DNA of 64,000 nt, from the NCBI GenBank assembly GCA_001600695.1, contig BCKQ01000001.1, forward strand, positions 2,649,228 to 2,713,227. The letters are read 5' to 3'. The stretch is from Ascoidea asiatica JCM 7603. Its lineage: Eukaryota; Fungi; Ascomycota. The translations under genes and the position numbers were made by a program. Under the pieces are notes generated by a model. That model did no database searches. It saw nothing but the letters and a program-made list of their open reading frames with translations, and was not told the DNA's origin. Shown piece by piece: positions 38,220-41,896 of the stretch; the first letter of the stretch is position 1; each line of letters opens with the position of its first letter.

Positions 38220-40628
38220 TTAATCCCAGTCTTTTGAATCCGCAAGGGCAAGTTTCACCAAATAAGGAACACCATCATTTTTATGAAAGAAAAGTTCTCT
38301 TTTAGCATTATCCTCTTTTGATTCACTTCTGAAATCATTTAGCTTCCTATATTTTATAACATTATTAGATTTACAATTAAGATCATTGCTTATATTTAGA
38401 ATAAAATTTGAAAATCTGGGTGCAGAGATACAATGTTCATCTTCTAAAGACGAAGACACCTCTATATCCATGTCTGGATCGCGAAAGTAATAACTTTCAT
38501 CAGGTTCACACCTAAAATAATTTGAAATTGGTTGAGATTCGAAAGTTTTGAGAACTACATCTGATTGTTTTTTCTTTTCCCTTTCAAGAAAACGAATGCT
38601 CCTGATTTTATTCTCGTCATTGAAATTGGAATGTGATACCTGTCTAGAGAAATGATTTAATGTTTCAGAAAAGTCAACATCTTTCTTCAGATCAATTTCG
38701 CGTTTAACTTTGTCAGGAACTTTTATAGGTCTTTCAAATTGTTTGCGCTGGCCCAGCTCAGAATTTCTAATATTGGTAAAATCAGATTTAGTTAAGGAAA
38801 CCGACAAATCATTTTTAACTATTAGGTTCTTCGACAACTCATTTGTTTTGTTTTGCTTAATGGATGTAGCTACTTCATTTTCTTTTCTATTTTTATTTTC
38901 TCCAATGTAATCGGGTAAATTTTCTCCTTTTATAATATCTGGGATCAAGTCTGCAAATTCTGATGGTCTACTATTTATGTTATTCAATGGATTATCTACT
39001 TTTTTTGTAAACCCAATAGCAGTTTTTATTTTATGAGAATTTGCAACTTTTGAATATAATTGCATTTCAGAATCTTTTTTGGGACTTTTTTCCGAATGGG
39101 AACCAGTATTATTTATTATATCCTTTTCAAGATCAAGGTCTTCTGATGTTTCTTCAAATAGCGAATTAAGCTCTTCGGAGTCTGAGTTGAAATCTTCTTG
39201 ATATAGTACATCAGCTGCCTCATTAATATCAACTAACGTGACAATATTGTTTGTCTTTTCTGCTTCTCTCGGTATAATTTCGAGCATGTCATCATCTGAA
39301 ATATTGGTATTATCAAGAGAAGGAAACAAATTCTTGGAGTTGTTATTGAGCAAATAAACCAATTCATCGGGCTTATCTATGAAATTGCTCATGAAATTAT
39401 TATTGAATATACTAGGAGAACACCAATAGCCATTTAGTTCCTCGTAATTCTTATGAGCACCCGTATGAACAATTTCCAACTTCTTCAATAAAAGTAAATG
39501 CTGGCATAAATCAAAATAATAGAGTACATTCTCAAGATGCATTAATGGATCTTCTCTTTTCTTTCCGAGAAGTCTACTAATAGAGTACCACACAAGACAG
39601 GATGAGGAGAGTGATGCATTAATATACCCATCAGAATAACGACGGCATATAGGAAATGATTTTTTGGACCTTATGTTATCACCAACTGTTATAATAACTT
39701 TTTTACATAGCAATTTCAAATTAGGTTTCGTTATATCGTAACTGCCACCTAATTTCTGAGCTTTTTTGACTTTTAAAAGTTTATTGGTCGTGATTTTGAA
39801 CTTCAAAGGAAAACCAAAAAAAGACTTCGAATCTTGAGATGGAAAATAAAAAGAATTTAGTTGTTTTATTTCAAGTGAAGTAGGCTTAAAATCCAAGTCA
39901 GAAAAATCACTCGAAAAATCTAAATTCAAGATACTCTTCAAATGAACATCTAACTTGTAAAAGCTAGAAAACTCCCTGGCATCTTTCAATGAAATCCATA
40001 CGCCTCCCATAATTGTTTTTTCCTCTGAAACTTTTCCTCTCAATTCATATTCCTTTTTAGCCTTTTTGAAAGTAGTAAGGTTTTCTTTGAATAAAAGTAT
40101 ATCTAATAGCAAGGAAAGTTTGAATTCATTAGAACTTTCTCTCCTTAGTACTCTTAGACAAGTGTTGGTGTCTAAAGGGACAAACATTTCATAAAACCTA
40201 GTCCCACAATATATGGTTACAGAAATCCGGTCAAACTTCAACAACGGAGAAAGTTCCTCTTGTAAATTTAGTGATTTTACCAACTTTCGAGCATGAACAA
40301 GAGAAGCATATTTCTCTTTTTGAAAATTTATACAAAAAATATTTTTTTTGACCAAAAGTTTAGCAAACTTTTTTTTATCATATTTTGCAAGTCTCTCAAA
40401 AGATGATATTGAAACCCAAGAACCTATCTTTTTTCTTTTTATTATAACTTCCCTAACTCTAAGAAAATAAACTTCTATATTTGAAGAGATTACATCACTT
40501 AAAACCTCCACTATGGATGAATGAGATAAAGCTTCGACCTCATCATTTTTATTAGAGAACGTTAGTGTGTTTATATCTTGCTCTTCTTTTTTGACGAAAA
40601 CCTCTTCTTCAGTTTTACATAACATCAT
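38220..40628 (-). CDS. Orphan protein with three putative tandem KilA-N/APSES DNA-binding domains
   Basis: 802-aa intact ORF; repeats at aa ~42-133, ~134-240 and ~305-410 resemble the Mbp1/Swi4 DNA-binding domain (see findings). Confidence 0.7.
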   Translation of the reverse strand: MMLCKTEEEVFVKKEEQDINTLTFSNKNDEVEALSHSSIVEVLSDVISSNIEVYFLRVREVIIKRKKIGSWVSISSFERLAKYDKKKFAKLLVKKNIFCINFQKEKYASLVHARKLVKSLNLQEELSPLLKFDRISVTIYCGTRFYEMFVPLDTNTCLRVLRRESSNEFKLSLLLDILLFKENLTTFKKAKKEYELRGKVSEEKTIMGGVWISLKDAREFSSFYKLDVHLKSILNLDFSSDFSDLDFKPTSLEIKQLNSFYFPSQDSKSFFGFPLKFKITTNKLLKVKKAQKLGGSYDITKPNLKLLCKKVIITVGDNIRSKKSFPICRRYSDGYINASLSSSCLVWYSISRLLGKKREDPLMHLENVLYYFDLCQHLLLLKKLEIVHTGAHKNYEELNGYWCSPSIFNNNFMSNFIDKPDELVYLLNNNSKNLFPSLDNTNISDDDMLEIIPREAEKTNNIVTLVDINEAADVLYQEDFNSDSEELNSLFEETSEDLDLEKDIINNTGSHSEKSPKKDSEMQLYSKVANSHKIKTAIGFTKKVDNPLNNINSRPSEFADLIPDIIKGENLPDYIGENKNRKENEVATSIKQNKTNELSKNLIVKNDLSVSLTKSDFTNIRNSELGQRKQFERPIKVPDKVKREIDLKKDVDFSETLNHFSRQVSHSNFNDENKIRSIRFLEREKKKQSDVVLKTFESQPISNYFRCEPDESYYFRDPDMDIEVSSSLEDEHCISAPRFSNFILNISNDLNCKSNNVIKYRKLNDFRSESKEDNAKRELFFHKNDGVPYLVKLALADSKDWD

Positions 40629-41032
40629 TAACTCTTCACTTTAATTGGAAGAATAGCATTGATTCTTGATCATTGATGTAATTGATAATATAAAGAAGTT
40701 CGAATGAATTATTCACCAGCTAAATACCTAATAATCCCGTAGCTCAAAACTTCTAAAAATTTCCTCTAATTCTAGAAATGTAAAGATCAAATTTTAATGT
40801 ACCTTAGTTGATTGCATTAACAATTGTGATATAAAAGTTTAAAAAGAGTACAAACTAGCGTTTTGGAAAATTATATTTTGTGGCGTATTAAGTGTGGCGT
40901 ATAGACTTTTAAAACTGATTTTACAGAATTCCATTTAATTACAACCCCAATTTGTATGTATTTGAAAATATTCAATTATCTAAGATTAAAATTTCTATTT
41001 ACATTTACAGGATAATGTTTAAATGGTTTACC

Positions 41033-41896
41033 TTATTTTAGCCAAAAGTAGTACCATCTGCTTTGATGTCTACTTAGAGTATCGGTTTTTATGGTAGGAG
41101 TATCTTTTAAAAAGTTTTCAGTGTTCGATTCAACACTTAATTCTTTTATCGATGAATTTTCCAACGTACCGACGAAATCACTATTATTTTTTAGTTCAAT
41201 CTCTGCCTTAGTTTCTAATTCTTCTCCGATATACTTATCCCTAAAAACAGCAATAATACTAACCAAAATAGCACTTAAAAATACAACATTACTTATTGGA
41301 TCCAACTTTTTGGTATAGTTATTGAAATCTTTTCTTCGACTCTCACTACATTCCATTAGATTTATTTCTTTTAGTTTATTTACAGTTTTCTTTGATAAAT
41401 ACTTTTTTTCATTGGCTTTAAATGGAATATCTTCAGGGCATGATTTGTCCCTATAATCTTTGAAACCTTCCCGGGGACCCCAATTGCCGTAATATAACCA
41501 ATATAAAAAAGTTTTTTCGTTTTTACTCAAACTGTTCCAATTTTCTTTTTGAAGCAAACTTAATTCTGCTTTAACTATATTTTGTTCTCCAGTAGATAAT
41601 TTTAGAAAATGAATTGGATCATTATTTATGATCTTTTTAAAATCAAAATTTTCCAATAATTTTTGTGCATCTTCGTCAGATTCCGAATCAAGGGGAATTA
41701 TAGATTGAAATATGTCCTTAAAAGAAAGAAGAGCAGTTTGTGTAAGGTCTTTTTTTTTTCTTAAATTTTTTAAATCTTGAGAAGAAACACCGGAATTAAA
41801 CTTTTGTTGTGCCCATGAAATAGAACTAATATTTCTTACTGAACGAAAAATATGCAAGGAATGAACCCTTAAAAAAGAATTGCTAAGTAAACTCAT
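41033..41896 (-). CDS. GEP7: Mitochondrial Gep7-like protein (COX subunit IV/Cox5-related motif)
   Basis: Presequence-like N-terminus, WNSLSKNEKTFLYWLYYGNWGPRE motif, single TM helix (VVFLSAILVSIIAVF). Confidence 0.65.
   Translation of the reverse strand: MSLLSNSFLRVHSLHIFRSVRNISSISWAQQKFNSGVSSQDLKNLRKKKDLTQTALLSFKDIFQSIIPLDSESDEDAQKLLENFDFKKIINNDPIHFLKLSTGEQNIVKAELSLLQKENWNSLSKNEKTFLYWLYYGNWGPREGFKDYRDKSCPEDIPFKANEKKYLSKKTVNKLKEINLMECSESRRKDFNNYTKKLDPISNVVFLSAILVSIIAVFRDKYIGEELETKAEIELKNNSDFVGTLENSSIKELSVESNTENFLKDTPTIKTDTLSRHQSRWYYFWLK

What the first reader, a model, noticed from the sequence alone, without database searches (positions are those of the whole stretch)
39399..40505. Orphan protein with three tandem KilA-N/APSES (Mbp1/Swi4-like) DNA-binding domains and no ankyrin repeats
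Seen in the 802-aa ORF: repeat 1 (aa ~42-133) SNIEVYFLRVREVIIKRKKIGSWVSIS...LVHARKLVKSLNLQEELSPLLKF; repeat 2 (aa ~134-240) ISVTIYCGTRFYEMFV...VLRRESSNEFKLSLLL...GGVWISLKDAREFSSFYKLDVHLKSIL; repeat 3 (aa ~305-410) PICRRYSDGYINASL...EIVHTG...LNGYWCSP. Established: the Mbp1/Swi4 domain reads YSGVDVYEF...IMKRKKDDWVNAT...QGTWVPLNIAKQLAEKFSVYDQLKPLFDF. Fungal APSES proteins (Mbp1, Swi4, Xbp1, StuA/Efg1, Bqt4) normally carry one such domain, and KilA-N is widespread in DNA viruses. Inference: this is a lineage-specific multi-KilA-N regulator with a disordered acidic tail, from internal duplication of an SBF/MBF-type domain or from a domesticated viral gene. The GGxGxxQG wing is degenerate in repeat 1, so specificity may be new or partly lost.
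Basis: partly seen in the sequence, partly recalled or inferred. Interest (0 to 1): 0.82.

Follow-up and report, generated by a model that had tools for sequence, protein, structure and literature searches.

The report
Yeast protein with three APSES domains
This intact yeast gene encodes three copies in a row of the DNA-binding fold of the cell-cycle regulator Mbp1; it is not an orphan but a fast-evolving member of a small, conserved, unstudied family found in several budding-yeast orders.

Summary

On its own the protein matches nothing in Pfam or the PDB. An exhaustive search found 16 homologue clusters in Ascoidea, Cyberlindnera, Wickerhamomyces and Komagataella, and the same genome holds three paralogues.

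Evidence for each module:
- Family profiles hit the Mbp1 DNA-binding domain for every module: E 8e-13, 1.2e-6 and 2.5e-4.
- Profile-profile probabilities against this genome's own canonical APSES domains are 98.5, 96.8 and 95.6%. Shuffled controls reach 7% at most.
- The alignment-based AlphaFold model (pLDDT 80.7, pTM 0.79) superposes module 1 on Mbp1 (Z 14.2) and module 2 on PCG2 (Z 12.7).
- Module 3 rests on profiles and secondary-structure order only.

- The protein is not an orphan.
- The triplication is ancient, because each module type forms its own clade across species.
- Nothing points to a recent viral origin.
- The Mbp1 wing motif QxGxGxxQ is missing from all three modules, not only the first.

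A C-terminal motif and an acidic DDLEII-type motif are also conserved. I found no paper on this architecture. The scan had already noted the paralogues on other DNA of this genome. Function is inferred: a nuclear DNA- or chromatin-binding regulator with non-MCB specificity.

The parts
38220..40628 (-). Complete intronless ORF of 802 aa, a triple-APSES family member
   Evidence: An open frame this long has chance about 1e-30 at local composition. It is collinear with homologues from N-terminus to C-terminal motif.
40506..40628 (-). N-terminal acidic, low-confidence leader (aa 1-41)
   Evidence: pLDDT is below 50 for residues 1-39. Net charge is -6. The stretch is not conserved in alignment A1.
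40230..40505 (-). APSES module 1 (aa 42-133), basic (pI about 10), with a shortened and degenerate wing (NFQKEKYASL)
   Evidence: The family profile hits Mbp1 1mb1/1bm8 at E 8e-13. hhalign against the own-genome APSES alignment gives 98.5%, E 4e-15. VIA-align to 1bm8 gives Z 14.2, rmsd 2.1 A over 91 residues, 22% identity.
39909..40229 (-). APSES module 2 (aa 134-240), fused to module 1 without a linker, with a GG-x-W wing end
   Evidence: The profile hits Mbp1 over the whole domain at E 1.2e-6. hhalign gives 96.8%, E 3.1e-10. VIA-align gives PCG2 4ux5_A Z 12.7, rmsd 3.0 A over 103 residues, and Bqt4 Z 10.5.
39717..39908 (-). Conserved linker between modules 2 and 3 (aa 241-304), with invariant P274 and F277 (F-G-F-P-x-x-F-K)
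   Evidence: Invariant columns in A1. The model shows helices 251-258 and 281-291 at pLDDT about 63-88.
39369..39716 (-). APSES-like module 3 (aa 305-420), with RRYSDGYINAS and LNGYW motifs and a long helix B
   Evidence: The profile hits Mbp1 at E 2.5e-4 in two collinear stretches. hhalign gives 95.6%, E 1.3e-8 against canonical APSES and about 95% against modules 1 and 2. The order of secondary-structure elements in the model matches modules 1 and 2. No structural superposition was obtained.
39069..39368 (-). Acidic region (aa 421-520, net charge -19) containing the conserved acidic-hydrophobic motif DDDMLEII (aa 445-452, window 39273-39296)
   Evidence: One search gives the charge. A permissive pattern finds a motif in 15 of 19 members in the acidic stretch after module 3; in about ten it lies 100-120 residues after the module 3 anchor. 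Reading it as SUMO-interacting-motif-like is inference.
38238..38357 (-). Conserved C-terminal motif (aa 758-797: KYRK..F ... EL.F.K.DGVP..VKL)
   Evidence: A local realignment of the last 80 residues of 15 members shows the shared pattern, including the window's copy.
40879..40902 (-). Promoter direct repeat ATACGCCACA x2 (gene strand), about 250-275 bp upstream of the ATG; it may not belong to the feature
   Evidence: Read directly. Function was not tested.

Best explanation
The gene encodes a diverged paralogue of a conserved, uncharacterised budding-yeast protein family. Its N-terminal 400 residues are three APSES/KilA-N winged-helix domains: modules 1 and 2 directly fused, then a conserved 65-residue linker, then module 3. 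AlphaFold packs them into one compact unit. After them come an acidic stretch with a DDLEII-type motif, a variable low-complexity middle and a short conserved C-terminal motif.

Shown here: the homology, the fold of modules 1 and 2, the family, its age, and the loss of the Mbp1 wing motif.

Inferred: the protein is nuclear and binds DNA or chromatin through the basic modules 1 and 2, with a specificity other than the MCB/SCB sites of Mbp1/Swi4. Module 3, which is near-neutral across the family, together with the acidic and C-terminal motifs, would recruit partner proteins. The window's copy is the shortest of four paralogues in this genome and one of the fastest-evolving, so it is probably sub- or neo-functionalised.
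For: Family:
- 16 homologue clusters, E down to 4.6e-33, named.
- Four members in the own genome by profile search.

Domains:
- Profile hits to the Mbp1 DNA-binding domain.
- hhalign against canonical APSES domains and between modules, with controls.
- Pfam KilA-N matches 15 of 19 members.

Structure:
- Model pLDDT 80.7 and pTM 0.79.
- The top ten Foldseek PDB hits are all APSES-type.
- VIA-align Z 14.2 and 12.7. In an all-PDB representative search the only folds at Z>=8 are Mbp1 and Bqt4.

Age: each module type forms its own clade.

Selection: the 802-codon open frame has chance about 1e-30, and the window's copy keeps 83% of highly conserved columns.

Charge: modules 1 and 2 have family median pI 9.6 and 9.4, like this genome's canonical APSES domains at 9.6.

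Conserved extras: the C-terminal motif and the acidic motif.
Against: - There is no experimental or expression evidence. No RNA run holds the locus.
- The QxGxGxxQ wing motif, whose glutamines are essential for PCG2/Mbp1 DNA binding (PMC4333399), is absent from all three modules. The position before G-x-W is variable in module 1, Gly in module 2 and Asn in module 3. The same paper says Swi6's N-terminal domain, with its shorter wing loop, cannot bind DNA.
- The window's module 1 has also lost the G and W of the G-x-W-x-P-L strand.
- Module 3's fold was not confirmed by superposition.
- The window's branch is long (1.88 changes per column), which could also mean relaxed constraint.
Confidence: 0.6

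Rival explanations
1. The three APSES-like domains no longer bind DNA and instead form a protein-interaction scaffold. Known precedents are the Swi6 N-terminal domain, and the Bqt4 APSES domain that binds Rap1, Lem2 and Sad1. The protein would then be an adaptor, for example a chromatin or nuclear-envelope tether or a cofactor of SBF/MBF.
For: The wing motif needed for Mbp1-type DNA recognition is lost in all modules. Module 2 superposes on Bqt4 at Z 10.5, and modules 1 and 2 superpose on Swi6's N-terminal domain at Z 6.0-7.5. Module 3 is near-neutral across the family. The high pTM suggests a rigid multi-lobe body. The Komagataella member lies head-to-head with a KilA-N plus ankyrin gene, which would fit a functional link to MBF/SBF.
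Against: Modules 1 and 2 are as basic as bona fide DNA-binding APSES domains of the same genome. Efg1/StuA-type APSES factors also lack QxGxGxxQ, yet are reported to bind DNA (TGCA sites; PMC4862756). No C-terminal hydrophobic membrane anchor like Bqt4's is visible in the sequence (output).
Confidence: 0.3
2. The window's copy is a redundant paralogue drifting toward loss of function. It would be an expressed or silent relic with no role of its own.
For: It is the shortest of the four paralogues and has a long terminal branch (1.88). It deviates at near-invariant positions N73 and N170 and at the G-x-W of module 1. No transcript data exist.
Against: The frame of 802 codons is uninterrupted in about 31% G+C DNA, with chance about 1e-30. 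The copy retains 43 of 52 highly conserved columns, within the family range of 75-98%. It keeps the distal C-terminal motif and the acidic motif. Its model is confident across all three modules.
Confidence: 0.07
3. The gene is a recently domesticated viral KilA-N gene, or the resemblance to APSES is due to chance.
For: KilA-N domains are common in DNA viruses (PMC4862756). The single sequence alone gives no Pfam or PDB hit.
Against: Fungal Mbp1-type domains are by far the best sequence and structure matches. Viral structures match poorly: the best is E 5.6e-3 with rmsd 15.6 A. Shuffled controls fail. The family is shared vertically by several yeast orders.
Confidence: 0.03

Closest known systems
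Mbp1/Swi4 (MBF/SBF) DNA-binding domain, including Magnaporthe PCG2
   Same: The winged helix-turn-helix APSES fold is shared. Module 1 superposes on 1bm8 at Z 14.2 with 22% identity, and module 2 on 4ux5 at Z 12.7. Shared sequence motifs are RRK..W(V/I)N(A/V)(T/S) and G.W.PL..A..(F/L)A ... P(I/L)L.F.
   Different: There are three domains instead of one. There are no ankyrin repeats and no Swi6-binding C-terminus. The QxGxGxxQ wing motif that reads CGCG is absent. The acidic motif and the C-terminal motif are different.
Swi6 N-terminal domain (2xfv)
   Same: It is an APSES-derived fold that has lost the DNA-reading wing. The structural match is Z 6.0-7.5.
   Different: Swi6 carries one such domain plus ankyrin repeats, and PMC4333399 reports that it cannot bind DNA. 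Here modules 1 and 2 remain strongly basic.
Bqt4 / MtgA (fission-yeast and Aspergillus inner-nuclear-membrane APSES proteins)
   Same: An APSES domain is followed by a long, low-complexity region with no ankyrin repeats. Module 2 matches Bqt4 at Z 10.5.
   Different: Identity is only 9%. Bqt4 has one domain and, from my own knowledge, a C-terminal transmembrane helix. No hydrophobic C-terminus is present here. The family profile does not hit Bqt4 by sequence.
Efg1/StuA/Sok2/Phd1 APSES regulators
   Same: They belong to the same superfamily and also lack the QxGxGxxQ motif while being DNA-binding. Four such loci exist in this genome.
   Different: They have a single domain. They form a clade separate from modules 1-3.
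Unnamed triple-APSES family (for example Ascoidea rubescens ASCRUDRAFT_9142, Cyberlindnera jadinii CYBJADRAFT_175685, Wickerhamomyces ciferrii BN7_4094, Komagataella pastoris BA75_02665T0)
   Same: Full-length collinear homology: three modules, the linker, the acidic motif and the C-terminal motif.
   Different: The window's copy is the shortest at 802 aa and among the most diverged. It is a lineage-specific extra paralogue, and unlike the Komagataella gene it is not next to a KilA-N plus ankyrin gene.

Membership tests
APSES / KilA-N superfamily (Pfam PF04383; PROSITE HTH APSES-type) | Statistically supported sequence homology to known APSES DNA-binding domains | tested here: met
   Family profiles of modules 1, 2 and 3 hit Mbp1 structures at E 8e-13, 1.2e-6 and 2.5e-4. 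hhalign against own-genome APSES domains gives 98.5, 96.8 and 95.6%, with controls at 7% or less. Pfam KilA-N matches 15 of 19 members. The window sequence alone scores nothing in Pfam.
APSES / KilA-N superfamily (Pfam PF04383; PROSITE HTH APSES-type) | Winged-helix beta/alpha fold superposable on the Mbp1 DNA-binding domain | tested here: met
   Met for modules 1 and 2: Z 14.2 (rmsd 2.1 A over 91 residues) and Z 12.7 (rmsd 3.0 A over 103 residues). For module 3 only the order of secondary-structure elements agrees. No superposition was obtained, so module 3 is inconclusive on this feature.
SBF/MBF subfamily (Mbp1, Swi4, Res1/2, PCG2) | QxGxGxxQ wing motif that reads the CGCG core | tested here: not met
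   The motif is absent from all three modules in the window's copy and across the family. Its requirement is taken from PMC4333399.
SBF/MBF subfamily (Mbp1, Swi4, Res1/2, PCG2) | Central ankyrin repeats and a C-terminal Swi6-interaction region | tested here: not met
   No Ank family appears at E<=10 in the 802-aa protein and none in nine homologues at E<=0.1.
Bqt4/MtgA subfamily | Single N-terminal APSES domain plus a C-terminal transmembrane anchor | tested here: not met
   There are three domains. The C-terminus read directly has no long hydrophobic stretch. No formal transmembrane predictor was run.
Triple-APSES yeast family (unnamed, uncharacterised) | Collinear module 1, module 2, conserved linker (F-G-F-P..F-K), module 3, then a distal C-terminal KY(K/R)K..F...DL motif | tested here: met
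   Alignment A1 has 13 invariant and 15 near-invariant columns spread over all three modules and the linker. The C-terminal motif is aligned. The window's locus scores E 4.5e-110 against the family profile; it is one of the 19 sequences the profile was built from, so that score is partly circular. The independent support is phmmer with the window sequence alone: 16 homologue clusters, E down to 4.6e-33.

The most novel reading that the evidence does not exclude
The triple-APSES proteins are a fifth, undescribed branch of the fungal KilA-N/APSES transcription-factor superfamily, beside SBF/MBF, Efg1/StuA-type, Xbp1 and Bqt4. In this branch three wing-modified winged-helix domains form one rigid body. 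That body would read a long composite DNA site, or bridge DNA to SUMOylated or other partners, giving a DNA-recognition mode not seen in single-domain APSES factors. The family has expanded to four diverging paralogues in this Ascoidea-like yeast.
Probability: 0.4. Interest if true: 0.7.

Novelty: new variant of a known kind. Interest (0 to 1): 0.55.

Why it matters
APSES/KilA-N factors (Mbp1, Swi4, Efg1, StuA) control the fungal cell cycle, morphogenesis and virulence. In the paper I read (PMC4862756) they fall into four subfamilies; that all described members carry a single such domain is from my own knowledge.

A conserved family with three fused domains lacking the Mbp1 DNA-reading wing would extend that picture. 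It would also offer a natural test of how the fold can be re-used, either for new DNA specificity or for protein binding.

The family includes Komagataella (Pichia), a tractable laboratory and industrial yeast, so the function can be tested directly. For this window the practical result is an annotation: the gene is a diverged paralogue of that family, not an orphan.

Tried and rejected
- **Single-sequence searches were blank.** Pfam and PDB searches with the window protein alone gave no KilA-N hit.
- **Word-indexed homologue searches were uninformative.** The window's N-terminus gave nothing. The full-length alignment A5 gave nothing, not even its own members, so this is a tool limitation and not evidence of absence. 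Cyberlindnera jadinii P0006 returned only four relatives.
- **Single-sequence AlphaFold was useless** (pLDDT 31). That used one of the two fold jobs, so module 3 could not be folded alone.
- **The Atlas fold search gave only low-TM single-domain matches** (Swi6, StuA, KilA-N). The Atlas feature search gave KilA-N clusters at 0.85, a lead only.
- **The viral structure library gave only weak matches**, so I rejected recent viral domestication.
- **I looked for synteny with the best homologue.** P0001 is flanked by Eco1-like and POC4-like genes and shares no neighbours with the window.
- **I looked for an MBP1-type gene upstream of the own-genome paralogues.** None was found; the neighbours are WD40, Polo kinase and others.
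- **No RNA runs exist for the locus**.
- **A TFIIS-N-like middle module**, suspected by eye in the Phaffomycetales members, gave no Pfam hit at E<=0.1 and I did not pursue it.
- **Genetic code.** The two CTG codons lie at aa 625 and 647, outside the domains, so an alternative CUG decoding would not affect the result.
Full report
**The locus**

The window is AT-rich (about 23-34% G+C). It carries intronless yeast genes: PHO80-like cyclin, NET1-like, UTP23, a SIW14-like phosphatase, CSE1, a DBP6-like helicase and a GH81 glucanase. The finding lies in an 802-aa ORF at 38220-40628 on the minus strand. At the local composition an 802-codon open frame has a chance of about 1e-30, so this is a maintained gene.

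**The sequence on its own**

Alone, the protein is silent. It has no Pfam KilA-N or ankyrin hit even at E<=10, no PDB sequence hit, and nothing in a word-indexed homologue search. A language-model feature search put fungal KilA-N clusters first, with a score of 0.85, which is only a lead.

**The family**

An exhaustive phmmer search with aa 1-431 found 16 homologue clusters, with E down to 4.6e-33. The named ones come from Ascoidea rubescens, Cyberlindnera fabianii and C. jadinii, Wickerhamomyces ciferrii and Komagataella pastoris. UniRef auto-labels several of them 'HTH APSES-type domain-containing protein'.

The window's own genome (20.3 Mb, 71 contigs) holds exactly four members by profile search. 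They lie on contigs C4 (1468 aa), C2 (1110 aa), C1 (this gene) and C7 (1421 aa). So the protein is not an orphan.

In a tree of the N-terminal regions the window's copy pairs with the C2 copy (support 92/86). It has a long terminal branch (1.88) but keeps 43 of 52 highly conserved columns, within the family range of 75-98%. The C4 copy is a close sister of the Ascoidea rubescens protein, which suggests an Ascoidea-like organism.

**Three modules, by sequence**

The 19-sequence alignment A1 shows three conserved blocks, with invariant or near-invariant residues in each and in the linker between blocks 2 and 3.

| Test | Module 1 | Module 2 | Module 3 |
|---|---|---|---|
| Profile vs PDB, top hits Mbp1 (1mb1/1bm8/1l3g) and PCG2 | E 8e-13 | E 1.2e-6, whole domain | E 2.5e-4, two collinear stretches |
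| hhalign vs this genome's six canonical APSES domains (two Mbp1/Swi4-type, four Efg1-type) | 98.5%, E 4e-15 | 96.8%, E 3.1e-10 | 95.6%, E 1.3e-8 |

The module 1 figure against the PDB comes from the whole-region profile A1, which matched through its module 1 positions.

Between modules, hhalign gives 98.3% for 1 against 2, 95.2% for 1 against 3 and 95.7% for 2 against 3. Reversed and 30 column-shuffled versions of each module reach at most 7% probability and score 21.8, against real scores of 50-85. Pfam KilA-N matches 15 of 19 members at E<=1. P0005 and P0010 score above the gathering cut-off, and some members match within module 3.

**Three modules, by structure**

The single-sequence model failed (pLDDT 31). 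With A1 as the alignment the model has mean pLDDT 80.7 and pTM 0.79. The high pTM suggests that the three modules pack in a defined arrangement.

- The ten best Foldseek PDB hits are all APSES-type: Mbp1, PCG2, Bqt4 and the Swi6 N-terminal domain.
- VIA-align places residues 42-132 on Mbp1 1bm8 (Z 14.2, rmsd 2.1 A, 91 residues, 22% identity).
- It places residues 134-242 on PCG2 4ux5 (Z 12.7, rmsd 3.0 A, 103 residues) and on Bqt4 (Z 10.5).
- In a search of 48,161 PDB representatives that does not depend on Foldseek, only Mbp1 and Bqt4 exceed Z 8. Nothing else competes, and module 3 gets only weak unrelated matches of Z 3.7 or less.

Each chain is aligned once, so APSES chains go to modules 1 or 2. 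Its predicted element order is strand, strand, short strand, helix, long helix, strand, strand, helix, helix. This parallels modules 1 and 2.

**Age and origin**

In a tree of all modules plus the canonical domains, modules 1, 2 and 3 each form a supported clade across species (100/95, 100/98, 99/97). Relations among the module types and the canonical groups are unresolved. The triplication therefore predates the divergence of the family members and is not specific to this lineage.

Viral KilA-N structures match poorly. I found no support for a recent viral acquisition beyond the ancient one proposed for the whole superfamily (PMC4862756).

**Beyond the domains**

The region aa 421-520 is strongly acidic, with net charge -19. 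It contains DDDMLEII at aa 445-452. In about ten members a similar acidic-hydrophobic motif lies 100-120 residues after the module 3 anchor. A permissive pattern finds one somewhere in the acidic stretch after module 3 in 15 of 19 members. I read this as SUMO-interacting-motif-like, which is inference.

The last 45 residues carry a motif (KYRK..F, then EL.F.K.DGVP..VKL) shared with most members. The homology is therefore full-length.

**How it may work**

In PCG2/Mbp1 the wing motif QxGxGxxQ reads the CGCG core. Q82 or Q89 substitutions reduce MCB binding at least 30-fold or abolish it. The same paper attributes Swi6's failure to bind DNA partly to its shorter wing (PMC4333399).

None of the three modules keeps this motif. 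The residue before G-x-W is variable in module 1, Gly in module 2 and mostly Asn in module 3. The window's module 1 has also lost the G and W themselves.

Even so, modules 1 and 2 are as basic as the genome's canonical APSES domains, with family median pI 9.6 and 9.4 against 9.6. Module 3 is near-neutral at 6.2. Efg1-type domains also lack the motif, and APSES regulators are reported to bind TGCA sites (PMC4862756).

My best reading is a nuclear DNA- or chromatin-binding regulator with non-MCB specificity, in which module 3 and the tail motifs recruit partners. The main rival is a non-DNA-binding scaffold in the manner of Swi6 or Bqt4. Neither is tested, and no RNA data exist for the locus.

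**Context and literature**

The Komagataella member lies head-to-head with a KilA-N plus ankyrin gene. None of the four copies in this genome has such a neighbour directly upstream.

Phrase searches for proteins with two, three or tandem APSES or KilA-N domains found no description of this architecture. The one paper returned uses the phrase for three separate domains in an insect genome. The homologues' locus tags appear in no paper in the library. The library is limited, so 'undescribed' is provisional.

Earlier notes of this scan had already described the paralogues on other contigs as a triple-APSES family. I reached the same reading independently before consulting them.

**Verdict**

The gene is a new architectural variant of a known domain family, already auto-labelled but uncharacterised. 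This gene is one diverged paralogue of it.

Noticed in passing
window 40879-40902 (gene strand is minus): A direct repeat ATACGCCACA x2, spaced by 4 bases, lies about 250-275 bp upstream of the ATG. The second copy runs into AAAAT, giving GCCACAAAA, which from memory fits the Ndt80 middle-sporulation-element consensus gNCRCAAAW. I roughly estimate chance at about 0.04 for this intergenic region. I did not test this.
   Followed up: partly
L018:5491-7839 (-) and L018:8001-10472 (+) (Komagataella pastoris CP014585.1): The Komagataella triple-APSES gene lies head-to-head, about 160 bp apart, with a 782-aa KilA-N plus ankyrin (Mbp1/Swi4-type) gene. This hints at an origin by local duplication or at shared regulation.
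   Followed up: partly
L005 (G000:C8:277937-278182) and L006 (G000:C18:12512-12757): Two Efg1-type APSES loci on different contigs are nearly identical in protein sequence over the domain and its flanks. They may be alleles or haplotigs, or a very recent duplication, in a 20.3-Mb, 71-contig assembly.
   Followed up: no
window 41033-41896 (-): The 287-aa ORF directly upstream of the target has only a partial COX4 (PF02936) match, exactly at the cut-off (26 bits, residues 104-143). It looks like a much-extended mitochondrial COX4/Cox5-like protein.
   Followed up: no
L014:2302-6708 (-) (G000:C4): This 1468-aa paralogue is a close sister of the Ascoidea rubescens protein ASCRUDRAFT_9142 (terminal branches 0.27 and 0.34, support 100/100). 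This suggests the genome belongs to an Ascoidea relative. Its module 2 is the only family segment that the Pfam KilA-N six-frame scan of the genome picked up (22.1 bits).
   Followed up: partly
P0004, P0005, P0006, P0008, P0010 (middle regions, about aa 560-720): The Phaffomycetales and Komagataella members share a helical middle block that by eye recalls a TFIIS-N/Med26-type domain. Pfam gives no hit at E<=0.1, and no counterpart is evident in the window's copy.
   Followed up: partly
tool behaviour: The word-indexed search with the full-length family alignment returned nothing, not even the alignment's own members. Low-complexity tails probably swamped the word selection. A blank from that tool on such proteins is not evidence of absence.
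   Followed up: no
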